Source: Guillardia theta CCMP2712
Lineage: Eukaryota > Protista > Cryptophyta
NCBI RefSeq assembly: GCF_000315625.1
Contig: NW_005434661.1
Coordinates: 768,345-832,344, forward strand
Direction: 5' to 3'
DNA: 64,000 bases
A program made the translations under genes and the position numbers. The notes under the pieces are model-generated. The model did not search any database. It saw nothing but the letters and a program-made list of their open reading frames with translations, and was not told the DNA's origin. Positions 106-30,500 of this stretch are shown here, one piece after another. Positions within the stretch are counted from its first letter, which is position 1. Each line of letters begins with the position of its first letter.

Positions 106-2636
106 GATTTCGGTACCTTGTGCTGGTGGAGTAAGAGCCGCCCAGGATGACGTAAGCCTCCTCATCCTCCTCGTCTTCATCATAGTCATCATCATATTTA
201 TCATCATAATCATGTCGTCATCCTCCTCCTCCTCCTCCTCATTGCTTTCTAGCGGCAGACGGATACTGTCTCTCTCGTTGAGCACTGTGTGCGTAACATC
301 CTACAAGTGTTGTTCTTGCAACACTCTGCTCCCTCCCCTCCCTTCCTCTCGACTTCTATCCGTCTCCTTCCTGACAATTCTCATGCTTCAGACATTCATT
401 GTCGACGTCGCCTCCTCTGCTTTCTCTCAGTGCATTCCCAACGGCTTTGCGGACAGCTCCCTGCTCTCGCGACAACAGCTCAAGGTAGGCGGGGGGCGAG
501 GAAGCGAGGAGGGAAAGGAAGAAGCGAGCAGGGAGAGGAGGAGGGAGGGAGGAAAGGAAGAGGGGTTGATGATAAGGGAGGGAGAGAGGAGAGGAGGGCA
601 AGAGAAGAGGAGGTTCCGATATCACAGGATATGAATGAAAGGAGCTTCATGAAGTTCAGAACTTGTTTGACGTCTTTGCAGGCTCTTTCTGATGTTTGCA
701 ATTCCGAGATCTACCGGTGTGTCTCCTCCTCTTGCTCCTCTTCCACCTTGTCCCTTCCTCCCTCCCTCTCTCCCTCCCCTGTTTTGCTGTCAGCTGCCTT
801 TTCAGCAATCCTCGTCTCCCCTCCTTCACCATCTCCTTTTCTTGCCACCTCCTCTCCTCCTCCTCCTCCTCTCCTCCTTCTCCTCCTCCTCTCCTCCTTC
901 TCCTCCTACTCATTACTTGACCATCATCGCATTGATCTGACCCCTTCGGCAGCATCTGGTATCACTTCCGCCTGAGAGAAGGAGACGGTTCTGTCGCTCC
1001 CGTCATCATCTTCATCGTCTATATGGTCTCTTCCTCTCCCAACCCCTGCTGCTGCTCCTCCTCTCCCTCCTCCTCTCCCTCCTCCTCTCCCTCCTCCTCT
1101 CCCTCCTCTCCCTCCTCTCCCTCCTCTCCTCAACATCCTGACAGTCGTCTCAGGGCCTGACGAGCATCGAGACGGTCATGTACTACACCTACATCCTCAA
1201 CTTCCATGAGGACGGGAGGATCCTGGACCTCTACAGGAGGCTCATCGCGTGAGTCCCTCCTTGGACCCTTCCCGCGTCCTGCCCCTCACGTTTTCCGCTC
1301 GCAGAAAGGAGGGGACGCTGTTCTGCCCCCTCGACGTCGAAGTCAGCCCTGCTGAGCTCATGACTATCCTCCAGGTCTGCCTGCTCTGCTCCTCGTCCCC
1401 TTCTTCTGTTCCCCTCCTAGCGCCATGAGTTACATCTACCCTCCTCCTCCTCCACCTCCTCCACCTCCCCCTCCCCCTCCTCCTCTTCCTCCTCTTCCCC
1501 CTTTCCCTCTTCCTTTCCCTTCCGCCCCCCCCCACCCCACTCGCCTGCTTTTTCCTCCTCTTTCTGCTCTCGGCTCTTGTTTCTTCCTCTTTCCTCTACC
1601 TCCCTTGGGGTGCCTCATTGATGTTTGATTTGTAATTAATCTGAGCAGATGGAGGGGGGAAAGATGGGAGGATGAAGGTACAGCATGGGCTGCTGCTGCA
1701 GACCAGGGGAAAGAGAGAGAGGAAGGGGGGTGCGAGAGGAAGGGAGAAGGAAGGAGTGAGGAAGGGAGAGGGAGGGGGAGAGAGAGGGGGGGGAGGGGAA
1801 CGAGAAGGACGAGGAGGATGTAATGATTTGTCTGCTAACTTTACTCTAGGAATTTAGTTGTCACAGAGATCAACGTCAATTATGAGAGCGAAAGTGAGGA
1901 GGAGACTCAAGCTTCCTCCTCCTCCTCTACCTCAAAAAGCTATACCCACATGGCGATATACACGTAGGAACTCCCCATCTTCCCCTGCCTCCCTCCCTGC
2001 TTCCCTCCCTGCCTCCCCTCCTTCCTGCCTCCCTTCCTTCCTCTTTCGTACTCCCATCCCCTCTTCCCAACCACCCCCCCCCTCCCCCTCACTCTCCTCT
2101 CCTTCCTAGCTGATGGCGCCTGATCGACCTCAGGTGCCAGAAGGAAGGGAAGCGCTTCCTTCATCGCCACTTCCTCCGCTTCCCCACAGGCAGCACCCGA
2201 GCGGTTCCCTCCTTGCCAGCATGACGAGATGCTGCAGGGGCCCTGGCGGAGCTCGTGGGGGATGAGGTGGAGTACCTCGTCTCCGCCTCCATCGTCTCTT
2301 CCATCCACAGGATCGTCGAGAGCTATGAGAGAGGTCTAGAGCACTTACTCCCTCCTCCCTCCTCCCTCCTCCTCTTGTACCTCTAAACCTTCGTTCCTCC
2401 TGCCCCCCACTTTCCACCCGCCTTCACTTGACTCTTCAGCTTCTCATCTTCTCCTTCCCATCTCAAATGCCAGCAGGCGAAGCTGCATGATGTGAAGGAG
2501 TTCAGCCAGGACGCGACGGGCTTTGAGCTTGTGTACATTGAAACATTGCCGGAAGCAACTTCTCTGCTATCATACACACAGTTCACGCTCTCCTCCTCAT
2601 CATCGGCTTCGCTGATTGTCCCAGGGATTTTCTGAG
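106..2636 (+). CDS. OFCC1-like membrane protein, 3' part, multi-exon (approximate bounds)
   Basis: Exons read IWYHFRLREGDGSVAPVIIFIVYM (~950-1025), YYTYILNFHEDGRILDLYRRLI (~1180-1247), LFCPLDVEVSPAELMTILQ (~1318-1373), RFLHRHFLRFPTG (~2153-2190) and IVESY (~2312). These resemble the C-terminal motifs of OFCC1 homologues as I recall them. Confidence 0.5.
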
Positions 2637-2934
2637 CCTGGCTGGCAGCTCCTGTACCATCAAGTCACGAGCCTCCGCCTCCCTCCCTGCTCCTCCCGCG
2701 GCCTCGTCCCTTCTCTGCCTCTTCCTCGTCGTTTTGACACTCTCTTTTCCCTCCCTCTTCCTCCTCGCTCCCCGTCAAGCCTCCTCTCACCTCCATTGTG
2801 TCATCGTCCAGCTCCGACAGCGACGCGATACTCTCCTTCAAGGTGAACCAAAGGCGGTCGAGCTTGGCGACCTGCGCAGCAGAGTTAACCAGCCGAAGGT
2901 CAATGAGACGCAGAGAAAGACGGGGTAAGGGGAA

Positions 2935-4992
2935 TCAAGAGCAGCTGAGGCAGCAGGAAAGAACCTTGTTGTATGAGAGCTTGATCGCCTCCTTCCTCTG
3001 CTTAGCCTCTTCCCACCTAATCATCCAGCGAGTGAGCATAGAAACACAGGAAAGGAGGATGACATGAGGGGGAGGGAGGAGGAGGAGGGGAGGAAGGGAG
3101 CAGGGAGGAGGAAGGGAGCAGGGAGGAGGAAGGTAGCAGGGAGGAGGAAGGTAGCAGGGAGGAGGAGGAGAGGGTCCTAACCTCTTGTCTGCCGCGATCT
3201 CACCCTCAGTCAGATCTTCCTTGCCGAAGGATGGGGGAGCGATGCCCCACTCAACCACGCTGTGCAAACGACACGAGAGTCAACATGAGAGCGAGAGGGG
3301 GGTGGCGAGGAAGGGAGGAGACATGAAGGAAACATTGAGGTGAAGCAGAAATGAAAGTGCCAGGAACACGAGTGAGAGGAGGAGAAGGAGATGACCTTCG
3401 TGTTACGATGTCAACACACTCAGCAGAGTTCTTGCTCAAGACGTCATCATTCACCACCTCGTCCCACTGAGAACAGTCAGCCGCCTCCTTCCCTCCCTTC
3501 TCCCCTCCTCCTTCCCTCCCTTCTCTCGTTCTCTTTACCTGGCATGGCTCCCAGTAATCGTACGTGGGCACACGAATCAGGCGGCACTGGATAAACGTGA
3601 GGAGGAGAAGGGGAGCAAGGGAAATTGCAAGGGAAGATAGACGAGTACAAAGGTAAGAGTCAAGAGGTGAAGAGATGAAGAGGCGAGGGGAGGGAGGAAG
3701 CAGGAACGAGGAAAGATGAAGAAGGAGGAGCAAGGGGGAGGAGGAAGAATGCTCTTATGACAGGATCTTACTTGATCTCCACCCCCCAGCACGTTCCCAT
3801 CGTCATCGAACATGATTGTGCGAGATATTGACACCCATGACATTCCGGAATCCTTTGAAAGCTCATCGCACACAAACTGGGCAGCAAGTCAGCTCCCCCC
3901 GCCTCACTCGCTGACACGGCAGCTGACCTGCAAGCTCTTCCTTGCAGCAAACTCAGGGTGTCCATCCTTACAGTCCTGCCTCGAGAACAGTCTGTAGATG
4001 AACTTGAAACCTAGCACCGCCCCTCAGCTTTCTGCATTAAGGAAAGCCCTCAAGTACCTGCCACCTCCTCCATCGCGGCACAAACTTTGCTCGCCCATGC
4101 CCGTTCGGAGTGCGTGTACACCTGAAGATCCTGTGTCAGCCTATCCCCTCGCTCGATGAGACTCCTCCTCATCCTACCACAATCGTGGCCCCGATTTCAC
4201 GTAGATACTGAATCATGCTGATCAAACTGCCGCGTACACGTCAATCCCTGCTCACATCTTCCTCCTCCTGCTCTTCCTCCTCACCCTGGGCGCAACATCC
4301 CTCGCTTCAGAAAGGGAACGATCTCGTCTGCGTTAAGCCCATGGTGCCTCCCCTCCGGCCACCAAGTCCAGTCGACATTCGTCTCAATGTTGTCCCTGCG
4401 CAAGGCAAGGCACGAGTCAGAACACCCCGAGGAGGACATCAGATTCAAGTCACCGATCGGACAGAGCCACCAGGTCACCGACCATCGTTCTGTCCATGTC
4501 AAACACGACCAGCAGCTCTTCACCGATCTTGGAGGTCGAGTGCTCTTCGTGGTCCTCCTCCTCCTCATCATCCGATTCCACAGCGATCGCGAGCTCCGAT
4601 TGAGTTCTCTTGAGACTCGAGGTGGGTGTGACTGTCCCTACCGTGTGATCCAACGTGTGGTGTTTGGCATCATGCTCCTGATGCTTGGCTGCGGTTTCCT
4701 CCTTGGCTACTGGCGCAGCTTCTTCCTCCTCGTCGTCGAGGTGAAGGTTCGACATGGACATGAACTTCCGTGAGAGAGTGCGGTGCTCTTCATGTCCGGC
4801 TCCCTGCTTGTGATGTCCATTGGCCGCGGTGGGCGACAGGCTGAATTTCTGCCCATCAAGTGACGAGTTGCGGCATGGCTTCACTTGTGGGGATTTGATG
4901 TGCATAAGAAAATCGTCGTCCTCATGCTCCTCGTGGTCCAAGAGTTCGATCTTAGTCTCGGGAAGATGCGAAGCTGAATCTCCTGTTCCCAT
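2935..4992 (-). CDS. FCP1/NIF-like HAD-superfamily phosphatase, multi-exon
   Basis: LLVVFDMDRTMVG (DxDxT motif I), MLRPG, VYTHSERAWA, RLFSRQDC and RTIMFDD (motif IV) in successive minus-strand exons. Confidence 0.75.
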
Positions 4993-9244: not shown

Positions 9245-11065
9245 TCATCGTCTTGATGGCGGAACATACTTGCCCATCGGTCTCGCTTTGTTTCCCGGAG
9301 AAGCTTTGGGCGTCGTTACTTTCTGTGGAGTTTTCCGCTCGAGGCTTGGCGACTTCTTGAGGCTCGCTTGGTTCTCGGCTTCTTCTTCTTCGCTGTTACT
9401 TGAGGTGCTGTTGCATTCCTCGTCTGGCTTGTTGCGCTCCTGGTTTGCAAACTCCACCTTCAACGTCGTGCAGCCACGTCCCCGGAGCTTCCGGCGCCCA
9501 AGCTCCGGGCAAGACGTGGACGTCAACGCCCTCAGCATCCTCCGCACTACCCACGGCACAGTCTGCATCAGCGGGTACCCCTGCTGATGATACTGCTCCA
9601 GCCTCTGAGCTACCGCTAGCGGAACGGTCTCCCAGCCGTTGTCTGTCTGAAAGCTCGTAGGCATCAAGATGCTGATCTCTCTCCCCGACGACGGCTTCCA
9701 GTCCCGCAAGATCCATCGCTGCACGTCGGTGATGGTGTTCTGACCGGCACATCCCGCACACTCTGCAATCTCCGTCGCACAGTTGAGATCTGGAACAAGA
9801 ATCACGCTCTGCAGCTCCTGTTGCACAACTGTGCCGGCCCCGCACAGGGCCTGGAACTGATCAGCCACCAGCACGGCGAACTGAACGCTCACTTCCCCCT
9901 GATTCTCTTCTTTTGACGAGGGTGCATACGCCCGTACCAAGATCAGAATCTGTACCAAGCAAGCAAGAGCGCTCAGGGGAGCCGCAGGGTAGTGAGAGCG
10001 AAGAAAGCTCTTGACGAACCGCAGCGGATCCTCGTGGTTGTTCCTCAGCTTGTTGATGTGCTCCAAGAAGGTCTGGACGAAGATTTTGCCGTACCGCTGC
10101 TCGTCCTCCCAGCTGTTGGGGACCAGTCCCTTGTCGCAGATCGCATGCGCATAGAGCAAAAGACCGTTGACCACCACCTTGGGATCATGGACATTTAGTT
10201 TGCGATGCGCGATCGTTGCCAACGCATCCTCAAACTTCGTCGCCAGCGATCGCGGCACTATTGCAAACTTCGTCTTCTTCCCATACATCGCATGTTGCCA
10301 ACCATACTGAGCCGGAGAAGGGAGATTGATCACGAAGGCGTTGGCGTGATCGAAGAAAGACCGCGTTTGCTTGATCTCCGAAGGAGTCCCGCGACAGAAC
10401 TCCAAGTCAAGGTTCCTGCCTGTTGTCGGATCGCCGATAGAGAGCAGACTGAACGATCCCACGACCACCTGCTTCTGAAAGTAAAAGCTTCGAACAATCG
10501 TCGACAGGTCCTTTGAGGGCGGTTGTACTGATCTGCTTTCAAACCACGTTGTGTATGCCTCTATGATAGCTTTCTCCACCACGTCTCTGCACTTGTCGAA
10601 GTCTAGCGTGCCGATGTAGAAGCGGAGGTCCAAGTCCGTAGGGACTACCCGCAGATCTTGGATTTTGAAGTCGTGTGCAATCACCGATCTTGCAACGCCG
10701 CCATACACTTCCACCACAGTCTCATATTCATTCTCTGAGTTCTTTTCTGCAATCTCGCGAAGTAAGCCATCCAGCTCCTCGGATATTTGCGCTATCAGAT
10801 CTCGAGGCTTCACGATCAACTCAGGCAAGTTCTCAGGCAGTTCAGACACCTGCGGCGTGACCATACGTCGTTGTGTGGGAACGACTTTGAAGTCGCTCGC
10901 CAGGATGTCACACAGTTTCTTTTGGCCGAGCTCACCCAATATCTGGTTATCACTCGCTGTCGCCGTGCTGCTGCTGTCGCCATTTCCGTTCGCTGGGCCT
11001 TTGCTGCTCATATTAGTTTCTGTAACGAGTGTACCATTTACAGAATCATTTTGTGCACCAGTCAT
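9245..11065 (-). CDS. TENT5: TENT5/FAM46-family terminal nucleotidyltransferase (non-canonical poly(A) polymerase), intronless, 606 aa
   Basis: VYGGVARSV...TDLDLRF (G[GS]...DxD), SLLSI..GRNLDLEF..RSFFDHANAFVI (cf. FAM46 GKNVELKF..RQFEFSVDSFQI) and FEDALATIAHRKL..DP..V.NGLLLY (cf. FEEAFDHLQNRLI..NPEEIRGGGLLKY). Confidence 0.85.
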   Translation of the reverse strand: MTGAQNDSVNGTLVTETNMSSKGPANGNGDSSSTATASDNQILGELGQKKLCDILASDFKVVPTQRRMVTPQVSELPENLPELIVKPRDLIAQISEELDGLLREIAEKNSENEYETVVEVYGGVARSVIAHDFKIQDLRVVPTDLDLRFYIGTLDFDKCRDVVEKAIIEAYTTWFESRSVQPPSKDLSTIVRSFYFQKQVVVGSFSLLSIGDPTTGRNLDLEFCRGTPSEIKQTRSFFDHANAFVINLPSPAQYGWQHAMYGKKTKFAIVPRSLATKFEDALATIAHRKLNVHDPKVVVNGLLLYAHAICDKGLVPNSWEDEQRYGKIFVQTFLEHINKLRNNHEDPLRFVKSFLRSHYPAAPLSALACLVQILILVRAYAPSSKEENQGEVSVQFAVLVADQFQALCGAGTVVQQELQSVILVPDLNCATEIAECAGCAGQNTITDVQRWILRDWKPSSGREISILMPTSFQTDNGWETVPLAVAQRLEQYHQQGYPLMQTVPWVVRRMLRALTSTSCPELGRRKLRGRGCTTLKVEFANQERNKPDEECNSTSSNSEEEEAENQASLKKSPSLERKTPQKVTTPKASPGNKARPMGKYVPPSRR

Positions 11066-16754: not shown

Positions 16755-17607
16755 TGAACCATCTGAGTGATTAAACCAACATGTCGTGAAGAGATTCGCC
16801 TTCAGCATAGTCCAATAGGCTGAATAGCGTCGTTCACATTATTCCTTAAGGTGGTCACCAGTCCTGCTCACTCGTGGGGTTAACGCGCTGAATTTCACAC
16901 AATCAGTCCAGAAACCTTCAGGTGAGTTTCAGTGGACAAGTGTCGGTGCGATGTCAACGTCTTATGTGATAACGAATTCATGTCGAAGAATCATAGCAGG
17001 GTAAGAAAGGTTCATTGTTGAATATTCTTTGAGGCCAAAAGGGCCAACCTTTCTGAAGCTTTCTTCATATCACTGCCGGGACTCGCTCGACAAAAATCTC
17101 AACCTCTTAAGATTCGCCATTGAATCGATCAGGTTCTGCCTTCACCAGTAGCTCGTGGGCAAGAAAGAGAGAGTACAAGGGCACGCAACGCCCTGCCGCC
17201 TCCTATCGTTCTGCTCTCACGAATTTCATCTTCAAGGGGCATCGTAACCCTCTAGTGGTGGTCATGCTCATACTCAAAGGAAGCCCGATCAGAATCCAAA
17301 GAACTATCATGATTCCATGCATGGTAGACGACGAGAGGCAATCAGATGACTGCAGAAAGAGGGGAAGCACTCGTATAGTTGTACCTCCTAATGTAATCCA
17401 GCTTGACAGCTTGCTGGCCTTCAGGCTGCTGCCTTGGTGAAGGGAACATCCTTCCACGTCTTCGCTCATCAACCCTGCCAGTGAACCCTGACACGTTCTT
17501 TGTGCTGCTTCAGTGTTGTCTAACGAACCATATAGGACTTGGTTCCTCGAGAGATCTTGAAGTTGAAATGTTGAGCTTCAGTGGCAACCTAACAGTCATA
17601 GTCAGCA

Positions 17608-17799
17608 AGCCACGTCCCCGGAGCTTCCGGCGCCCAAGCTCCGGGCAAGACGTGGACGTCAACGCCCTCAGCATCCTCCGCACTACCCACGGCTTCATGG
17701 TCCGTCGGTGCATCCGACCTGCTGATGATACTGCTCCAGCCTCTGAGCTACCGAAGCCGTGGGTAGTGCGGAGGATGCTGAGGGCGTTGACGTCCACGT
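17608..17799. repeat. Partial duplication of the TENT5 CDS forming a perfect 47-bp inverted repeat
   Basis: 17608-17693 = 9472-9557 (86 nt identical); 17718-17753 = 9580-9615 (36 nt identical); arms 17650-17696 and 17753-17799 are exact reverse complements. Confidence 0.95.
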
Positions 17800-18149
17800 G
17801 TAAAAGACGATCTCAGGCCTCTTAGCGAGTACACGCGCACAGGTGTCAAACACACAAAGCGCTCTCTGAGCTTCTTGCACTCTTCACGGCAACCCGCAGG
17901 CATTCTGCTCTCCCCTTGCGATGAGCGCCTTCCAGGACCCCCGGGGTAGTCATGGTGCTGCTACTCAGATAGCCCTTACTTCAAAGCCTTGAGAGTCGCA
18001 ACGGTTCTGGACTTGTACGTCGGTTGCTATGAGCAGAGAAGGACTAAAACGGACGGAGATCATTATGTCCAGGTCGGCCAGCCGAGGACTACTGTTGAGA
18101 TCCTACTGAAACAACACCAGCATCGTCAGCAGCTGTTAAATCTTTGATA

Positions 18150-21100
18150 ACCTTCAAGCCTCCAAATTTCCTCAATCATGATCCTGATGGGTCTCAGGTT
18201 TCAAGCTTTGTTTTCCTCTTCTGCACCCCTCTCTGCCTCTGCCTCTGCCTCTGCCTTTGCCTCACTTGCAAGGTTCCTCGTCTTCTGCCTCTCTCTTGCT
18301 CCTTCCCGCTCCTTCTCCTTGTCTGCATACAACATCATGACAACTAGAAGCACAGCCAGCCAACCTCACCTGCCGCCCTGCCTCACATGACATTCTCCCG
18401 CATCGGCCTGGATCTCCTCCTCTTCTGCAGCATTTGCTGTAAAGCACATCAGTGGCTGATCTGCCTGCTCCTCTCCTATAACCTCATACTGCGGAATCTC
18501 CTTCAGAATGTACTCAAAGTCCCTGCTCAAGCTCACGATCAGACGATCGTGAGTCGGAGGACAAGGCAGAGCACCAGTGCTTTCCCCTGTGCCCCGAACG
18601 GAGAGCCTTCTCGTATCCCTTGTCTATGGGGCAAGAGCGACTGGCATTGAAGGCCTGGGCGACAAAAGCCATGGGAACAACCTCAACGGAAAGTGAGCAA
18701 GAAACAGAGATGCGGGAAGAGGAGGTAGGTAAGAAGAGAGAGATGCTGAAAGGAGCGGAGGATAGAAACGTTGTTTGAAAGGAATGCTATGTTGAGAAGA
18801 GAGAGGAAGGGGCATCGGAGGTCTACCAAGGTTGGCCGGGCGCTTCTTTTGCGTAGGAGGTACCAAGTTTCGTTGTTTACCCTATAGTGCATGTAGCTGA
18901 AGAAAAACGTCAGCAGAACCTCAGCACAGTCCTCGTCATCTCACCCGAACATATCGATGAAATTGACGCCCTCTGCCTTTACTGTACAATATTCACCACA
19001 TCCAGGGGAGCCATCCCCCTGCCCTGCTGTAGCTCCTGCATCTTGCTCCTGGCTCCCTTGCAGGGCATCTCCCTCCTTCTCCATCACGCGGTCCATCACT
19101 GCGTCCACGGGTGAGGAGAGGATCGCTGAGATCGCCCGCTGGTCATCCGTCCCACCCTCTTCCCTCCCTGTCGGGCAGACACTGCATGAGCCGGATGGCT
19201 GCTGGACTCCTGCTGCATGAGCAGTGGCCTCCAAAGAGAAAGGCTGGAGGCAGAGGGGAGTCAACAAGCACGAAGAAGAGTACACAAACAACGACGAGGA
19301 CAGGACTGACGTCAAACAAGTGAGATCGAGGAGGAGGGAGCGCAAAGGACATGAGATCAGCAGCACAGACCTCCGAGTTTTCTCTCTTGTGGTCTTTGCA
19401 ACCTTTCTTGGACGGGTAGAACCTGTCGAGAGAAACCTGGGACGACTCATGCGAGTTGAAGTGATAGTAAGTGATAAAGGATCCCCTGAGAAAAATAAGC
19501 GTCAAGAACAAGGGGAGTGATGAGTTCTTGACGCTCATTTTTCTGATGAGTTTCGTTATCAGAAAGGCGAAAGATAGGCGAGATATGTTGTAAAAGCATA
19601 ACAAGGATGTCAACATCTGAGCGCCATTACCGGATAGCATGAGCGGTTCTAGAGTGGCATAAGATCGGATACCATGCAACGGCAAACCTGCAAGAGAGTC
19701 AGTGGGTAGTGGAACATACATGCTTCCTCCTCTGACACGCATGCTTCCTCCTCTGACACGCATGCTTCCTCCTCTCACCATGAGCGTTCGAGCACAAGAT
19801 CGTCATTGCTGATTTCCATCAGGATGTGCGACAGCAGCTCCTCTTCCCTCTCGCCCTCCTGCACCGATAGGGTCAGCAACGAGTCAGCACCGTCGAGCTC
19901 GCAGACGGAGACGTCACCGTCTTCAAAGAAGGCAGCTCCAGAATCCCATCATACAAGGGAGGTCGTTCTCCAGGGCTTCTCTCCTCGTAGAACTACGGTC
20001 CCTTTGTCAACTCCCGTGTGAAACGCGCATGCTCCCTCGCTCACCTCGAAGACTGCTTCGCTTTGCATGTCGCCAGATGAGGCTGCAGAACGTGGCCGGT
20101 AAGCTTTCCAGTGTCTTCACCATCATCCATCAGCCTACCGCCGTCACCTCCATTCCTCGTCTGCCTTCCGTCTGGGCCTGCTCTCTTCTCCTGCTCGTCC
20201 CGCAACTCGCCTGGCAGACCTTCTGCCATTGAAAGTGAGTCTCGACATGCCGCCTGACCCCGCAGGCCTACTTTGAGCACGTCGGTCAGTGAGCTGCTGG
20301 CTGCTGTCCTGCTCCCCTTTGGAACTCTGCGTTGCGGGCCAGCTCACAGCAGAGGTATAAGAGTACTTGGGACAAGACGATCCTTGTCCTTGATTGCAAG
20401 GCCGCCCGCCAGAGTTTGAGCCGTCCCCTCCTGCCTCCATCCCAGCATCTTCGTACGGGTTGATACCTCCTTGTATCTGGGCAGACACTCGACTAGCCCA
20501 TGAGAGCGAAGCAGCTTCCTCCCTCCTCTGCTGAGCCTCCAGTGCCTGATGACCAACATCATGCGTGATCGCGGAACAGTTACACTCTCACCAGCTTAGC
20601 AGTTTTGATCTCCTCCTCTCGTCTTTGCTTGATCTCAGCGAGCTCGACACATAGGGGATAGCTCGGTGAGTCCTTCCGAACAAACAACTGCACAAAGGGG
20701 AAAAGAGTCAACTGGAGCAAAGGTGCTGGCGAGTTGAGAACAGAAGAGAAAGACGAGAGTAGAGCTGAACAAAGAAGATAGACAGCACCGACCTTGATCG
20801 CAGACAGGTGAGGCACGTAGAAAGCTGGCGTGATCTCTGCAGCAATATGGTGCGTCTTCCCATACAGCAATCATTCTCGCGCAGACGACGGACAAAAACC
20901 AACCTGAGTGGTGGAACTTTTCAGGAGGATGGGAACTTCAAACCCGTAAGGCTTGTCGAACCATTCCCACAGCTGCCTCAGACTAGCACAAGGACTCAAC
21001 AACAAGAATCCACAGGATTCCTCCTCGTTGCAGACCTGAAACTTCCCTTGGGCACCTTTGGGACAACTGCCTGAAAGAAGAAATAGATGTTCTCATCTGC

Positions 21101-23322
21101 AGCACCAGACTGTTTAGGATGCAATCGGCACAATCATGACAGCATAACACCTGATGTTGGTTTCCCGTCTTTGTTGATGTATTTCTGATTTGATTGAGCA
21201 TCACATCAACACAAAAAGATGAAACACCCCACCTTCCGCGATGCATTCAAACCAGAGGTTGTAGAGTCGACCGAGGTCGTGTGCGAGGTTTCAGAAACAT
21301 CGTCAGGCCTGATATCTCCCGACACCCTCACTCCCTGCGATCTCGTGTACTCTGCATTCTGGATCTGGATGAACTGGTTCAAAGACGTTGACCCGGTCGT
21401 CTTGGTAACAGCTTCCGTCTCGTCCTGCGACACATGCAAAACTTCACGAGAGACAGACAAGGAGCTGACAGTCTGCTGTGCAGTCTGCTGATACTGGAAT
21501 TGCGTTATTGGCACTGCAGTAGGCTGTGCGGGTGCAGGGAAAAAGTAGGCTCCCTGTGCTTGCCCGTCGGTGCCCTGCATCACCATGTAATATTCCGGCT
21601 GGGCACCTAACAGGGGACTTGTGTTGCTCTGGCTGTCGCCGTTGCCGTTCGCGGGGCCTATGTTGCTCTTGAATGTTTCTGTTATCAAGCTGAGTGGATA
21701 CCACTTCTGCAAACTCCAATCTCAATGCTGTATATAGCATCGACAGCAGCTCCTTTACCTCAGCCTGGACGCCCTGCGCCATCCAGGAATCGCCGGGTGA
21801 CACAGGAAGAGCCATTTGGGAGTGCAAGGGACTTTGCGCTGCTGTTCCGATGTTACCTCTTCCCTCGTGAGATCCACTCTTAGTGGAGGGAGCGCAGAGC
21901 TGGGAACCATCGGTAATAGTCATTCACGATAAGGAAGGTGTCTCGGACATCAAACCTCAGCGAAGCTCCCAGACGTTTGGAGGACCTGCAATGCTCTGGC
22001 AAACTCCTCAAGAATATCTTGTACGGTGTAGTCGTTGACGTATCTCCCCAAGTCAAGGTTGATGTCGAAAGGATCCTCTATGCAAAATATATGCCTGTGA
22101 CCCGTGAGCAAGTTGAAATGTTTTGGATGAAGGGCTCTTACCTGTTTCTGAAGTCTTCCGAGGTATCCCATCCCTTCGCCTTCTTCCTGAGAAGCCTTCC
22201 ACTTCGTATACTCACAACTCCCTTATCAATCGGAAAGACTGGAAACATGCTTTAGTCGGCGTTGCTGCATCCATTCCGGTGTACCATTGGAGTAGAAGTG
22301 GAAGAACCCAACGAGAAGAAGCCCCAGCGATGAACGATTGTTCCTTTCACCGAAACCTGGAGAACTTTCATCGAAGAAACGAGCCTTGCACTGTTACTCG
22401 CTAATGTCTCAACGTTTCTGTAGAAGTAGCAGTCGTACACATCTCCGTCACAGGAAACAGCAAACGATGGATCGTTGTTCAGCGTGGCCTGTACGCGCCG
22501 CAGACTTTGCAAGCACGGCAGCACTCTTTCATACTGCAGGTATTGGATTACCATCAACGTATACGTGTAAGAACTCAGATAGCCTCTGAAGGTTTTGTGA
22601 ATTCGACGTTGCTTCACCCAGTGCTTGATGCACATGATCAGCGGCCTGACCCTCTTGTCCAGCATGGTGTATGTGAACAGCAAGTCGGTATTGATACAGG
22701 CAAGGACATTGTTGACACTCAGATCGCAGTCAAAGACAAAATCAAGACCGTCTTGCGCCTTGAACTTGATGATAGGAACTCGGGCATAGGGCAGAGCCTC
22801 AACATTCAACATTCCTTCCCTTTCCAGCAGCCTAGCAAGACCAATGAGAAAAGATATAAATTTTTCTTTCTGTGAGTTTGCCGTCATCATGCAATTGTCC
22901 GCGAACCAGCAGGATTCAAGCTGTGTGTTCATAAACACTCCTTGACTCTTTTGAATCTCATCTTCAGGAACAACAACACACAAGTCTACATCTGAGCCCT
23001 TGGAGCAAAGGTTGCTCCCAAATGAACCAAACATCTGTACTCTCGAATTTGGATAAGTCCTTGCAATGGTCGTGTTCAATGTTGTACAGACGCTAATCTT
23101 ACGATCGATTTCTTCTCTAGGAGGACAGATCTCCGCCACAAAACTCATGCAATCATTAGAAAGGAGATCCATATGTTCGGCTTTCACCTTGGGGTTCACA
23201 ATGCTCGTACACAAAGTTGGCGGTTGTGTGTCGAGACTGGTCGTGAGGTGCTCATCGCTGACCCCTGCAGCACCCCTGTAATAGGCTCCCTTGATCTCGG
23301 CAACATACAGCGATGGCAGCAT
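18150..23322 (-). CDS. Cid1/TUT/URT1-type terminal uridylyltransferase with a PAP-associated domain, apparently spliced in frame to a C-terminal DUF789 domain (3' end approximate)
   Basis: MFGSFGSNLCSKGSDVDLC, ARVPIIKF, CDLSVNN, IKHWVK..LSSYTYTLMVIQYLQ, SLGLLLVGFFHFY and IEDPF. Then the DUF789-like NIYFFFQAVVPKVP, SLRQLWEWFDKPYGFEVP, FYVPHLSAI, FYEERSPGERPPLYDGI, SW and SFITYYH. Confidence 0.8.
19718..19778. repeat. 21-bp tandem repeat (CATGCTTCCTCCTCTGACACG, ~3 units), intronic
   Basis: Read directly. Confidence 0.85.
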
Positions 23323-27500: not shown

Positions 27501-30500
27501 TCAAGACATCAGATAATACAAACTGATCTGTACAAGCTGCTTCGTCACGTTCAATCGTCCTGGAAACCTCCTTCTCTGTCCCAGGCATAGAGCGGAGGGG
27601 GAGGAAGAACTCTCGAGGAAAGGAGCGAAGGGTTGTTCGTGGCGGTGAAGAGAAACTGAAACGGATGCGTCACTTGACATGGAGAGAGGGAAGAACAAGA
27701 ACAAGAACGACTAAGAGGAAGTTGAGGGTGGTGGAGGAAGGAATGGGGCACAGTATGGAACAAGAAGGTAGGGGACAGGGAGGGAGGGAGGGAGGGAGGG
27801 AGGGAGGGAGGGAGGGAGGGAGGGAGGGAGGGAGGGGAGGGAGGGAGGGAGGGAGGGAGGGAGGGAGGGGAGGGAGGGAGGGAGGCGGTTGGCGGGAGGG
27901 GTCGAGGGTCGTGAGAGGATGGAGAGAGCTGCTTCAACATCTCCGTTAGTCTGCTTGAGAGCGTCGGAAGCCTTTGAGGAGAGCAGCGAGTCAGTGCTGG
28001 GGGATGACGAGGAGGAGAACCTGATGAGGGTCGCAGGAGGGAAAAGCCTCGATAAGTCTCATCACCTTGTACTCGAGCTGAACGAGCTTGTTAGCGATGT
28101 GAAGAAAACCCCTCCTCTCCTCTCCTCTCCTCTCTTTCCCCTCCCTCCCTCCCTCTCCTCCCTCATTCCCATCCTCTTGCTCACAAGAGAACAGCTGTTC
28201 TTCCCATAGAGATGCATTTCTGTCTCCACAAGCTGCCAAAGCTGTGAGTTTCCCCCTTCCTCCTCCCCATCCTCTCACTCACTTGACTCCAGAAGTTGAA
28301 GTTCGGCGCGATGCATCCTCGTTGAGCCTGCACTTGTCTCACTAACTCCTTGTGCTCGTCCTCCCCCTCNNNNNNNNNNNNNNNNNNNNNNNNNNNNNNN
28401 NNNNNNNNNNNNNNNNNNNNNNNNNNNNNNNNNNNNNNNNNNNNNNNNNNNNNNNNNNNNNNNNNNNNNGAGGGAGAGAGGGAGGGAGGGAGGTGATCTT
28501 GCCTGCCATCGATTTCTCTGAACGATTGCTATCTTCTTTCGCTCCCTCGCGGCTTTTCCTTCAGTGGACTGATCCTGCAAGGCAAAGAGAGGTGAGCGCA
28601 AGAGAAGGAAAGCAAAGAGAGGGAGGAAGAATGAAAGATGGAGGCTTGCAGGAAGCTGAAGGGTGAGAGGAGGGAGTGAGCTAGAAGGGAAGCAGGAGGC
28701 AGTCGTAGCCAGAGAGGAAGGGCAGGAAGGGGAAGGGGAGGATGGACTTCGAGGCTCCTACCGCCTCCGAGATCTGCTTGAGCTCCCTCCGGCGGTACAG
28801 CGCGTTGGAGAGGTTGTAGGCCATGACGGAGGTGACGGGGGCGTTGTAGAAGAAGTCGAGGTAGAGCATCGCCATGAAGGCAGCATGCCCGGGATCGAAG
28901 TTGGCGAGGGAGCCCTCGAGCACCGGGATGTCGAGCCTGCAGAAGTTGATGGCGAAGTCAGCGTATGTGAAGAGGACGCGGAGGACGGCGAGAGCGGGTC
29001 CAGTGAGGAAGTGGAGGTAGAGGCCGATGAAGTCGTAGACGCCATAGATCCTTCTCGAACGGATGTAGATGCCGCTCACTGCTATGCTGTTGACCCAGGC
29101 CCGCAGTCCCCAGCAGCCGAGCTCGATCAGAGCCAGCCCCCCAAGAGGGAGGAAGACGAAGAAGACAAAGAAGCGCTGGGTGGGCTGCCACAGGAGGAAG
29201 GAGACGAGGAAGAAGACGGGAATGAAAACCAGCATGGCCGACACGAGGCTGGACCAGAGCTGCCTCCCCACGTAGCCAGAAGCGTCATGGATGGGGAAGT
29301 GCCAGACGCGGATGAGGGTATGGTCAGCCCTCAGCTGCATCATCATCCGCCGGTAGGAGCGAAAGATCTGCAGCCATGCCCATAGGAAGGAGGCGATGAT
29401 GGCTAGCTGACCTGCCGAGGTCCCCGTGAGCATGGAGGAGAGGAGCTGCTCGAAGAACGCGGGCCCGTCTCCGTAGATCGACTCCATTACCGTGTAAGAG
29501 AGCGCGACGATGTCGTACCTGTTGGAGTAGGGGGCGGTAGGATAGGCCGCCATGCTGGAGGAGGAGGAGACGGAGGTCTGGTAGTTCCCCAGCGCCTCAC
29601 GGTACCTCACGACCTCTGCTCGCAGTCTCTCGAGCCCGAACACGACCCTGTTGGTCAGCGACTGTAGGGCAACCAGGAGAACGAAGACGGCGCAGGCTGA
29701 CATCCCGAAGCCCTGGAGGAGGCGGACGGGGTAGTTGAAGCCCGTCTCGAAGCTTCCTCCTCTTCCTCCTCCTTCCCCGACCAGCCGGTCCACGAGTTCC
29801 TTCCCGTAGTCTGCGAGGATGCCGAGGAGCCCCCAGAAGCCCTCCAACTCCACCACCTCCCTCTTGACCTCCTTCTCGTCCTGGATCCGAACTTTCTTCT
29901 GCCGCGCCATCGCCTCCTCCGTTGACGCCTTGCGAGCAAGGACGATCTCGCGGTCCTTGGCGTTCTCTTTCCTCAAGATCTCCCTCCTCTTTTGCAGCCC
30001 GGTGGCCTCAGCCTGCGCCTTCCCGTCCTCGTTGCTGCCCAGGTTGTGTCCGTGCACCATGGGGCCATGGGAGGAGGAGGACGCTCTGGTGACCTCCTCC
30101 TCCTTGGGGTGAACTCTGTTCTTCTTCCTCCGCATGCTCCAAGTCCTCTTCACCTTCTTCTCCCTGGCCTCAGGGCTGACCAGCAGGTTTCTGAAGGCAG
30201 TCAGGTAGCGTTTCTGCCTGTACGTGAAGTACTGCAGGCTGTCAGTCTGAACCACCAGCCGAAGGAGGATGATGGTGATGGCGAAAGTGTTGATCACCAT
30301 GAGCCCTCCGCACAGGACGATCTCCTGCTGCACCTGAAGCAACAGTGAGCAGCGGCAGACTGGTAGGACGCTCCTCCTCTTACCTTGGAAGGAGACCCAT
30401 AGGAGGCGATCACAGCACGGAAGTACAAGGCAGAAACGATGGCGAAGACTATGCAGCCGAGGAGGGAGAGTTGAATCCAGACCCGACTTCTGTCCACGAT

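What the first reader, a model, noticed from the sequence alone, without database searches (positions are those of the whole stretch)
17608..17799. Perfect 47-bp inverted repeat built from a copied piece of the TENT5 coding sequence
17608-17693 is identical to 9472-9557 and 17718-17753 is identical to 9580-9615. The intervening 22 nt of the gene are replaced by 24 different nt containing a mini-hairpin (gtcgg-tgcat-ccgac). Arms 17650-17696 and 17753-17799 are exact complements around a 56-nt loop. If transcribed, the RNA would form a Dicer-sized dsRNA stem with 44 nt matching TENT5 mRNA, resembling inverted-duplication birth of hpRNA/miRNA genes. Alternatively it is a fold-back, template-switch repair scar, as it appears to sit between two truncated gene remnants. 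Complete identity implies a recent origin.
Basis: partly seen in the sequence, partly recalled or inferred. Interest (0 to 1): 0.78.

Follow-up and report, generated by a model that had tools for sequence, protein, structure and literature searches.

The report
Repair scar linking two algal loci
The perfect hairpin-shaped repeat is real, but it is a very young DNA-repair scar in the alga Guillardia theta: one site was folded back on itself and patched with 36 bases of a neighbouring gene, and 84 bases of the scar overwrote part of that gene, so it is probably not an evolved regulatory RNA gene.

Summary

- The right arm (17753-17799) is native. It begins a 3.7-kb segment that is 91% identical to contig C58, which has one arm only.
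- The left arm plus the "24 different nt" is an inverted copy of that native arm and its flank.
- Only the 36-nt loop piece comes from the TENT5-like gene.
- The 86-nt "source" block in TENT5 is foreign to it. Two related cryptophyte sequences, Hanusia phi, a G. theta transcript fragment and an otherwise identical JGI protein all carry a conserved 29-aa segment where the reference has 28 unrelated residues. That segment is absent from the whole assembly.

The two loci therefore carry reciprocal patches, with 4-nt and 1-nt microhomology junctions and nested snap-back palindromes. This points to fold-back/template-switch repair that is very recent and probably not fixed.

One transcript-derived protein reads across a scar junction, so that junction exists in RNA. 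No Piwi/Argonaute or tandem-RNase-III Dicer was detected, and the stem has no target in the TENT5 transcripts on record.

Unchecked notes from this scan report similar hairpin scars elsewhere in this genome.

The parts
9245..11065 (-). TENT5/FAM46-like nucleotidyltransferase ORF (606 aa) of the reference assembly
   Evidence: ORF listed. Pfam NTP_transf_7 matches aa 79-342 at 33.2 bits, above the 27-bit cut-off. The reference gene model P0003 is a suffix of this ORF.
9473..9556 (-). Foreign 84-nt in-frame patch in the TENT5 ORF (aa 504-531). It replaces a conserved 87-nt (29-aa) segment. The identity block shared with the 17.6-kb site is 9472-9557.
   Evidence: P0001, P0006, P0007, P0005 and the Hanusia phi proteins P0002/P0008 all carry a conserved 29-aa segment here. 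P0007 is otherwise identical to the window ORF over 503 + 75 aa. The ancestral segment occurs nowhere in the assembly.
9558..9579 (-). Ancestral TENT5 coding sequence (block b, the G-YPLMQTV codons). It was not copied to the 17.6-kb site.
   Evidence: Conserved in all orthologues. It differs from 17694-17717.
9580..9615 (-). Ancestral TENT5 coding sequence (block a, the VAQRLEQYHQQ codons). Donor of the 36-nt filler at 17718-17753.
   Evidence: Conserved in all orthologues and 100% identical to 17718-17753.
17442..17607 (.). Stretch U, left of the scar. It is not alignable to the C58 paralogue. Its start (together with the preceding native bases, 17426-17476) resembles a short piece on contig C89.
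17608..17649 (.). 42-nt block d. It is found only here and in the TENT5 patch. It is itself a snap-back palindrome: a 10-bp stem plus a 6-7-bp outer stem that pairs across the junction with the left arm.
   Evidence: Unique to the two C13 sites. Positions 17610-17626 are the reverse complement of 17630-17655 minus 3 nt. The fold appears.
17650..17696 (.). Left arm: an inverted copy of the native right arm
   Evidence: It is homologous to the reverse complement of C58.
17694..17717 (.). The '24 different nt' (block b'). They are the inverted copy of the native flank that preceded the right arm, and they include the mini-hairpin.
   Evidence: The minus strand aligns with the C58 flank (CAGGTCG ... 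ACCATGAA) directly next to the arm.
17718..17753 (.). 36-nt filler copied from the TENT5 coding sequence (antisense on the + strand). It forms most of the hairpin loop.
   Evidence: The junctions have 4-nt (CCTG) and 1-nt (G) microhomology.
17753..17799 (.). Right arm: native sequence of this locus. At least 21 nt of its original upstream flank are missing in the forward orientation.
   Evidence: It is collinear with C58:336251-336297 (41 of 47 identical) and with 3.7 kb of following sequence.
17753..21437 (.). Segmental duplication shared with contig C58 (336251-339895, 91% identity). It serves as the pre-event comparator.
   Evidence: Weaker homology continues leftwards at 17282-17441.

Best explanation
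This is a very recent, probably not yet fixed, complex DNA-repair rearrangement. It links two sites 8.1 kb apart on one scaffold of the Guillardia theta nuclear genome.

At an intergenic site near 17.7 kb, repair synthesis folded back and copied about 70 nt of native sequence in inverted orientation. That copy comprises the 44-47-nt arm, its 24-nt upstream flank and CCTG. Synthesis then switched by 4-nt microhomology (CCTG) to the TENT5-like gene and copied 36 nt of its coding sequence as filler. It rejoined the native sequence with 1-nt microhomology and lost at least 21 nt of the original flank. A nested snap-back produced the 42-nt palindromic block d.

In the same event or a closely following one, 84-86 nt of the new structure (block d plus the inverted arm) were copied into the TENT5 ORF. 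There they replaced a conserved 87-nt coding segment and happened to stay in frame.

Shown: the identities, which pieces are native and which are foreign, the microhomologies, the absence of the ancestral TENT5 segment from the assembly, and the presence of one scar junction in RNA-derived data.

Inferred: the enzymology (microhomology-mediated template switching, or polymerase-theta-type templated insertion), the order of the steps, and that the reference carries one allele or culture variant while the transcriptome shows the ancestral one.

The hairpin is a by-product. Any dsRNA it forms is incidental.
For: 1. Native right arm. Window 17753-21437 is 91% identical to C58:336251-339895. C58 has a single arm, preceded by a flank ending ...CAGGTCG...ACCATG.

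2. Inverted native flank. On the minus strand, the left copy's 24 'different' nt align to that same C58 flank directly beside the arm. The left arm plus those 24 nt is therefore an inverted duplicate of native sequence.

3. TENT5 is the recipient of the 86-nt block. P0001 and P0006 (ENA), P0002 and P0008 (Hanusia phi), P0005 (UniRef, G. theta transcriptome) and P0007 (JGI/IMG) all carry a conserved 29-aa segment between ...PLMQTV and CTTLKVEF.... The reference has 28 unrelated residues there. P0007 equals the window ORF over the other 578 residues. The ancestral segment is absent from the window and from the whole assembly.

4. TENT5 is the donor of the 36-nt block. Its codons are conserved in all orthologues.

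5. Junctions. They show CCTG and G microhomology, and block d is an internal palindrome that spans the d|arm junction.

6. Age. There are 0 substitutions in 169 nt of copied sequence, against about 7% divergence between the C13 and C58 segments.

7. Independent support for one junction. P0004 (MMETSP/JGI transcript) is TENT5 aa 1-495 followed by VGCTDGP and a stop. That is exactly the reading from the 36-nt block into the 24-nt block of the scar.

8. A second fold-back insertion of 25 nt distinguishes C13 from C58 at about 19519.
Against: No genomic reads could be inspected, so the TENT5 patch junctions rest on the assembly alone. No transcript-derived protein with the patch was found.

The origin of about 23 nt of block d and of stretch U is unknown.

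The order of events cannot be fixed. Two separate events between the same two sites would be needed if it was not one concerted repair.

P0004 may be a k-mer chimera of the transcript assembler through the shared 36 nt. It could instead reflect a third, unassembled allele in which full TENT5 is joined to the native flank, which would call for a different rearrangement model such as an inversion with staggered breaks.
Confidence: 0.68

Rival explanations
1. Assembly or cloning artefact. The hairpin and/or the TENT5 patch exist only in the reference assembly (chimeric clones, mis-joined reads at palindromes). The real genome would then carry ancestral TENT5 and an un-duplicated native site like the one on C58.
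For: The G. theta transcriptome fragment P0005 and the otherwise identical P0007 encode the ancestral 29 aa, which the assembly lacks completely. No transcript-derived protein with the patch was found. Perfect palindromes are a classic product of library artefacts (own knowledge).
Against: The junction between the 36-nt and 24-nt blocks of the scar is read through by an independent RNA-derived sequence, P0004. An artefact would have to create five clean junctions at two loci, with the TENT5 replacement in frame and free of stops, inside contiguous sequence of a 1.06-Mb scaffold. Microhomology junctions and nested snap-backs are biological repair signatures. A comparable fold-back insertion lies 1.8 kb away.
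Confidence: 0.12
2. Newborn hairpin-RNA (endo-siRNA or proto-miRNA) gene. The locus is transcribed and folds into a 47-bp stem, and the stem is diced into small RNAs that repress the patch-bearing TENT5 mRNA, as in the inverted-duplication model of miRNA birth.
For: The stem is perfect and very stable on both strands. 44 nt are identical to the reference TENT5 ORF. RNA that contains one scar junction exists (P0004). P0005 starts at the first full codon 24 nt before the branch point. That fits a k=25 assembly graph in which the path into the scar was taken by the main contig, which hints that scar RNA is not rare (inference).
Against: A six-frame search of the whole genome finds no Piwi and no ArgoL1. 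The only PAZ hit is weak and lies in an ORF with no Argonaute features. The only RNase III is a 277-aa single-domain protein, and the Dicer_dimer hit is a DEAH helicase. No RdRP was found, although that search had no positive control. The stem sequence is absent from the ancestral-type TENT5 transcripts, so the 'target' was written by the same accident. The C58 paralogue has no hairpin. Rfam gives only sub-threshold generic hairpin matches at 45 bits or less against gathering scores of 81-95.
Confidence: 0.06
3. Old TENT5 pseudogene remnant refreshed by gene conversion. A decayed second TENT5 copy once spanned about 17.6-21.7 kb, and its C-terminal fragment was recently homogenised with the intact gene.
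For: A TENT5 N-terminal motif lies at 21626-21691 on the same strand and in the expected order (68% aa and 80% nt identity).
Against: The arm and the 24-nt block are native non-TENT5 sequence shared with C58. The 86-nt block is foreign to TENT5 according to its orthologues. Stretch U or other flanking sequence shows no residual TENT5 similarity. C13/C58 homology continues to the left of the scar, so the scar lies inside that unit and not at its edge. Conversion also needs flanking homology, which is absent at the patch borders.
Confidence: 0.06
4. RNA-mediated origin. A reverse transcriptase jumped between templates (TENT5 mRNA and a transcript of the native site), and the chimeric cDNA was used to repair breaks at both loci.
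For: The genome is rich in active retroelements according to unchecked notes of this scan. A chimeric TENT5/scar RNA-derived sequence, P0004, exists.
Against: There is no poly(A) tract, no target-site duplication and no loss of an intron to mark reverse transcription. Inverted snap-back copies and 1-4-nt microhomologies are equally typical of DNA polymerases. P0004 is more simply a transcript-assembly chimera.
Confidence: 0.04

Closest known systems
Microhomology-mediated template switching (FoSTeS/MMBIR) and fold-back inverted duplications with a spacer (own knowledge of the DNA-repair literature)
   Same: An inverted duplicate lies next to its source. A short templated segment from a nearby locus is inserted between the copies. 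Junctions have 1-4 nt of microhomology. A few tens of nt are lost at the breakpoint.
   Different: The scale is tiny (tens of nt rather than kb). The second locus also carries a copy of the newly made junction, so the patches are reciprocal. The mechanism was not observed, only its sequence signature.
Polymerase-theta-mediated end joining with templated or snap-back insertions (own knowledge)
   Same: There appear to be iterated rounds of priming on microhomology. These include snap-back on the nascent strand (block d pairs across its own junction) and copying of flanking sequence in both direct and inverted orientation.
   Different: The copied tracts (36, about 70 and 86 nt), and a template 8 kb away, are longer and more distant than typical insertions. 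No polymerase-theta gene was looked for here.
Quasi-palindrome correction and hairpin-templated mutation (own knowledge); hairpin-type micro-insertion scars noted elsewhere in this genome by this scan (s1-435479, s1-445577, unchecked)
   Same: Palindromes are created or perfected by intra-strand templating. Another 25-nt palindrome-forming insertion separates C13 from C58 at about 19519.
   Different: Those scars are 8-25 nt and local. This one involves two loci and rewrites a coding sequence.
Birth of plant miRNA/hpRNA genes by inverted duplication of the target gene (own knowledge)
   Same: A perfect inverted repeat shares sequence with a nearby protein-coding gene, and there is evidence of some transcription.
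   Different: The arms do not derive from the target gene; the gene received the arm sequence. No Argonaute or Dicer is detectable, no small-RNA data are available, and the structure is not conserved.

Membership tests
Template-switch / fold-back repair product | An inverted copy of sequence that is native to the adjacent site | tested here: met
   The left arm plus the 24-nt block is the reverse complement of the native arm plus flank, as defined by the C58 paralogue.
Template-switch / fold-back repair product | Short microhomology at the novel junctions | tested here: met
   CCTG (4 nt) at 17717|17718 and G (1 nt) at 17753|17754. Microhomology at 17649|17650 is 0-2 nt or cannot be determined.
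Template-switch / fold-back repair product | Templated filler whose donor can be identified, and loss of sequence at the break | tested here: met
   The 36-nt filler is the ancestral TENT5 codons. At least 21 nt of the native flank are missing in the forward orientation. In TENT5, 87 nt were lost and 84 gained.
Template-switch / fold-back repair product | Junctions present in the real DNA molecules | not testable with these tools
   There is no access to reads.
hpRNA / endo-siRNA or young miRNA gene | A long, near-perfect intramolecular stem | tested here: met
   A 47-bp perfect stem at -142 kcal/mol, z about -13 to -15.
hpRNA / endo-siRNA or young miRNA gene | The hairpin is transcribed as one RNA | tested here: inconclusive
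   P0004 shows RNA across the junction between the 36-nt and 24-nt blocks only. Strand and extent are unknown, and it may be a chimeric contig.
hpRNA / endo-siRNA or young miRNA gene | The host encodes a Dicer-type RNase III and an Argonaute/Piwi | tested here: not met
   No Piwi or ArgoL1 was found. PAZ is weak and sits in a non-Argonaute ORF. There is one single-domain 277-aa RNase III. The Dicer_dimer hit is a DEAH helicase. Caveat: six-frame searches of an intron-rich genome can miss split domains.
hpRNA / endo-siRNA or young miRNA gene | 20-24-nt small RNAs from the arms and cleavage of the target | not testable with these tools
   No small-RNA or degradome data are available.
hpRNA / endo-siRNA or young miRNA gene | Arm complementarity to an expressed target mRNA | tested here: not met
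   The transcript-derived TENT5 proteins P0005 and P0007 lack the 28 aa encoded by the arm and block d. Only the reference model P0003 has them.
Rfam miRNA precursor families | Score at or above the family's gathering threshold | tested here: not met
   The best hit is MIR9677 at 45.3 bits against 90. All hits are generic hairpin matches.
MITE or other transposon with terminal inverted repeats | Multiple dispersed copies with terminal repeats and target-site duplications | tested here: not met
   The sequence occurs only at the two C13 sites and as a single arm on C58. No flanking duplication is present.
Gene conversion between paralogues | Homology flanking the converted tract at both loci | tested here: not met
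   There is no similarity beyond 9472/9615 and 17608/17753. The tract is a mosaic with opposite donors.
TENT5/FAM46 nucleotidyltransferase (the gene at 9245-11065) | NTP_transf_7 domain above Pfam's cut-off | tested here: met
   33.2 bits against a cut-off of 27, aa 79-342. Catalytic residues were not examined.

The most novel reading that the evidence does not exclude
One repair accident created a hairpin locus and, at the same moment, wrote the hairpin's arm into the coding sequence of a gene 8 kb away. A transcribed dsRNA and its only perfect target would then have been born together as a polymorphism in a laboratory strain. If the alga has some non-canonical dsRNA-processing route, despite no detectable Argonaute or Dicer, this would be a live snapshot of how a small-RNA regulator and its target arise as a pair.
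Probability: 0.05. Interest if true: 0.72.

Novelty: new member of a known kind. Interest (0 to 1): 0.36.

Why it matters
This natural example of multi-junction template-switch repair is unusually easy to read. A paralogous segment shows the state before the event. Orthologues and the alga's own transcripts show the ancestral coding sequence. Every copied piece is still 100% identical to its source.

It shows three things:
- Such repair can leave reciprocal patches at two loci.
- It can overwrite 29 conserved codons of a gene with unrelated sequence while keeping the reading frame.
- It can create a perfect hairpin that looks like a young small-RNA gene without being one.

There are two practical points. 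The reference protein model of this TENT5-like gene carries 28 residues that the species' transcripts do not encode. Inverted repeats that share sequence with a neighbouring gene in this genome should not be read as regulators without small-RNA data.

Tried and rejected
1. I first read the right arm as exon 1 (ATG ... GT donor) of a plus-strand gene, from the C58 alignment. I rejected this. The TUTase domains lie on the minus strand. The 47 nt are more diverged between C13 and C58 than the supposed intron. Divergence across the 3.7-kb segment shows no exon/intron pattern.

2. DUF789, suggested by another first-reader note, was not found by a family search of the genome (no positive control) or by Pfam scans of minus-strand ORFs at 18-22 kb.

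3. I tried to fetch the DNA of the contigs that encode P0001, P0004 and P0007.
- The search for related loci on metagenome contigs found nothing.
- A 20-nt pattern scan returned three unrelated chance matches.
The nucleotide sequence of the ancestral 87 nt, and what follows the junction in the P0004 transcript, therefore remain unknown.

4. A second protein search with the C-terminal 137 aa, looking for transcript fragments that carry the patch, returned nothing. This is uninformative, because only cluster representatives are searched.

5. C89 was checked as a possible third paralogue. It shares only about 70 nt.

6. Literature searches on G. theta RNAi components and on its ploidy or heterozygosity returned nothing relevant.

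7. A simple two-break inversion model explains P0004 but not the assembled structure, so I did not adopt it.

Full report
**Organism and setting**

The window is G000:C13:768345-832344 of an 87.1-Mb, 669-contig eukaryotic assembly. An earlier follow-up in this scan names it Guillardia theta. That fits the UniRef member A0A7S4J8D7_GUITH in the TENT5 protein cluster.

The finding lies between two genes. A plus-strand DUF4336 gene ends by about 16.75 kb. A minus-strand terminal nucleotidyltransferase has its MTPAP-like palm domain in the ORF at 22252-23322. The stretch 17.8-21.4 kb gave no Pfam hit.

**1. The observation**

- 17608-17693 equals 9472-9557 (86 nt).
- 17718-17753 equals 9580-9615 (36 nt).
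- 22 nt of the gene are replaced by 24 others that contain the gtcgg-tgcat-ccgac mini-hairpin.
- Arms 17650-17696 and 17753-17799 are perfectly complementary over 47 nt, with a 56-nt loop.

Nothing comparable exists elsewhere in the window. The predicted RNA fold is -142 kcal/mol on either strand, 13-15 standard deviations beyond shuffles. The gene at 9245-11065 (minus strand, 606 aa) does carry a TENT5/FAM46-type NTP_transf_7 domain.

**2. The right arm is native, not a copy of TENT5**

A search of the whole genome with 17550-17850 found a third site, C58:336251-336348. Extending it shows that window 17753-21437 is 91% identical to C58:336251-339895. Divergence is uniform at about 4-8% per 100 nt. 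Weaker homology continues to the left at 17282-17441.

The high-identity block starts exactly at the first base of the right arm. C58 has one arm only (41 of 47 identical) and no inverted partner within 29 kb. The arm therefore belonged to this locus before the C13 and C58 segments diverged. The hairpin is a later addition, specific to C13.

**3. The "24 different nt" are the inverted native flank**

Read on the minus strand, 17717-17694 aligns with the sequence just upstream of the arm on C58. Both run CAGGTCG ... ACCATGAA into the arm and differ by three small indels.

The left arm plus these 24 nt plus CCTG is thus an inverted duplicate of about 70 nt of native sequence. In the forward orientation the native flank is gone, and its place is taken by the 36-nt TENT5 piece.

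**4. TENT5 is the donor of 36 nt but the recipient of 86 nt**

A protein search with the C-terminal region of the ORF returned two clusters. Their members were listed and aligned.
- **Ancestral segment.** Two ENA proteins (P0001, P0006; about 94% identical overall), two Hanusia phi proteins (P0002, P0008), the G. theta transcriptome fragment P0005 and the JGI/IMG protein P0007 all carry a conserved 29-aa segment (LNALRY...EEICKMR). It sits between ...GYPLMQTV and CTTLKVEF....
- **Reference version.** The window ORF and its reference gene model P0003 have 28 unrelated residues there (PWVVRR...RGRG). These are encoded by 9473-9556, that is by the arm sequence plus the 42-nt block d.
- **Same background.** P0007 is identical to the window ORF over the other 503 + 75 residues, so it represents the same genetic background.
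- **Absence from the assembly.** The ancestral segment is found nowhere in the window or in the whole assembly.
- **The 36-nt block.** Its codons (VAQRLEQYHQQ) and the 22 nt after it (the G-YPLMQTV codons) are conserved in every orthologue, so they are ancestral TENT5.

The two loci therefore carry reciprocal patches. This is the opposite of "a hairpin built from a copied piece of TENT5" for everything except the loop.

**5. Junction anatomy**

- The junction from the 24-nt block into the 36-nt block (17717|17718) has CCTG in common between the native flank (as seen on C58) and TENT5.
- The junction from the 36-nt block into the right arm (17753|17754) shares one G.
- Block d (17608-17649) occurs only at the two C13 sites. 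It is itself a palindrome: 17610-17626 is the reverse complement of 17630-17655 minus three bases. It pairs across the d|arm junction, so at least part of it was synthesised by snap-back after that junction existed.
- In TENT5 the patch borders show at most 1-2 nt of possible microhomology.
- All copied pieces are 100% identical to their sources, against about 7% divergence between C13 and C58. The event is therefore far younger than that duplication.
- Within the same duplicated segment, C13 has another 25-nt insertion at about 19519 that is the reverse complement of its own flank. Fold-back insertion thus recurs here.
- Unchecked notes of this scan describe hairpin-type micro-insertions, and another inverted-repeat locus with captured fragments of a neighbouring gene, elsewhere in this genome.

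**6. RNA evidence**

P0004 (MMETSP/JGI Transcript_13979, 502 aa) is TENT5 residues 1-495 followed by VGCTDGP and a stop. That is exactly the translation of the scar's minus strand from the 36-nt block into the 24-nt block. RNA-seq reads therefore contain that junction. This is independent evidence that the junction is real and that some RNA covers it.

P0005 begins at the first full codon that lies 24 nt before the point where TENT5 and the scar diverge. A k=25 de Bruijn assembler would leave this pattern at a branch. This is my inference from how such assemblers work, not a tested result. P0004 is therefore most simply a chimeric contig that joins TENT5 mRNA to a scar transcript through the shared 36 nt. 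A real, unassembled allele that joins full TENT5 to the native flank cannot be excluded. No transcript-derived protein with the patch was found.

**7. Is it an hpRNA gene?**

Six-frame family searches of the whole genome gave the following.
- No Piwi (the search's controls responded) and no ArgoL1 (no control responded).
- One weak PAZ hit, in an 883-aa ORF that shows no Piwi domain and no Argonaute match among solved structures.
- One RNase III, a 277-aa single-domain protein.
- A near-threshold Dicer_dimer hit that proves to be a DEAH/dsRBD helicase.
- No RdRP, though that search had no positive control.

Split exons could hide divergent genes, so this is absence of evidence. Still, a defining requirement was tested and not met.

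The stem's only perfect "target" is the patch written into TENT5 by the same accident, and the transcripts on record lack it. Rfam returns only sub-threshold generic matches to miRNA hairpin models. I put a functional small-RNA role at about 6%.

**8. Most likely history**

Shown: which pieces are native and which are foreign, the junctions and their microhomologies, the recency, and one junction in RNA.

Inferred: a break or stalled fork just upstream of the native arm was repaired by synthesis that did the following.
1. It snapped back and copied the arm and its flank in inverted orientation.
2. It switched through CCTG to the TENT5 coding sequence 8.1 kb away and copied 36 nt.
3. It rejoined the native arm.
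4. In the same episode or soon after, a break inside TENT5 was filled with 84-86 nt copied from the new structure.

The signature fits microhomology-mediated template switching (FoSTeS/MMBIR) or polymerase-theta-type templated insertion (own knowledge). The tools cannot tell these apart or fix the order of steps.

The strain's transcripts encode the ancestral TENT5 segment and the assembly does not contain it at all. The rearranged chromosome is therefore probably one allele of a heterozygous cell, or a variant that arose in the culture used for DNA. An assembly artefact remains possible at about 12%.

The replaced 29 residues are strongly conserved as far as Hanusia phi (23 of 29 identical), so the patched protein is probably impaired. 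This is an inference.

**9. Comparison and novelty**

The closest known things are complex template-switch rearrangements and fold-back inverted duplications with templated filler. This is a small, clean natural member of that kind. Its unusual features are reciprocal patches at two loci and an in-frame overwrite of conserved codons. It is not a member of any known RNA family, transposon family or simple gene-conversion tract (see the membership table).

**10. Limits**

- No reads, no small-RNA data and no other strains were available.
The transcript and relative contigs could therefore be studied only as proteins.

**Verdict**

The repair-scar alternative is supported and refined. The hpRNA reading is weak. 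Interest is moderate to low (0.36).

Noticed in passing
window 9473-9556 (minus strand): The reference gene model of the TENT5-like protein (P0003) contains 28 residues that G. theta transcript-derived proteins (P0005, P0007) do not have. The conserved 29-aa segment they encode is absent from the whole assembly.
   Followed up: yes
window 17753-21437 and G000:C58:336251-339895: A 3.7-kb segmental duplication at 91% identity with no obvious exon/intron pattern of divergence. Weaker homology continues at 17282-17441. No Pfam domain was found in it.
   Followed up: partly
window 19472-19561: An imperfect 38-nt inverted repeat (82%). It was created in C13, relative to C58, by a 25-nt insertion that is the reverse complement of its own flank. 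This is a second fold-back insertion in the same segment.
   Followed up: partly
window about 19719-19781: C13 has two extra 21-nt tandem units (42 nt) relative to C58. The tract translates as repeated MRVRGGS on the minus strand.
   Followed up: no
window 17426-17508 and G000:C89:121720-121785: A short piece of about 70 nt just left of the scar is 92% identical to a site on contig C89. It is circularly permuted and flanked there by a 13-nt direct repeat. It may be a small dispersed repeat or an older templated patch.
   Followed up: partly
window 21626-21691 (minus strand) and G000:C41:438951-439064: Copies of a TENT5 N-terminal motif (aa 12-33, 68% identical; 80% at the nt level) lie next to the TUTase gene and on another contig.
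   Followed up: partly
G000 as a whole; L020 (C54), L021 (C71), L022 (C28): No Piwi, ArgoL1 or tandem-RNase-III Dicer was detected by six-frame searches. The only RNase III is a 277-aa single-domain protein. An 883-aa ORF on C54 has a weak PAZ-like stretch and nothing else recognisable.
   Followed up: partly
G000:C52:518881-519915: A second NTP_transf_7 (TENT5-like) paralogue, 39% identical over aa 37-407 and lacking the C-terminal region.
   Followed up: no
window 18150-23322: The TUTase palm domain is on the minus strand (ORF 22252-23322). The DUF789 part proposed in note s1-434922 was not detected, either by a family search (which had no positive control) or by Pfam scans of ORFs.
   Followed up: partly
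window 27770-28177, 499-1518 and 2057-3512: Long purine/pyrimidine low-complexity tracts ((GGGA)n facing (CCCT)n-like runs) that form imperfect inverted repeats.
   Followed up: no
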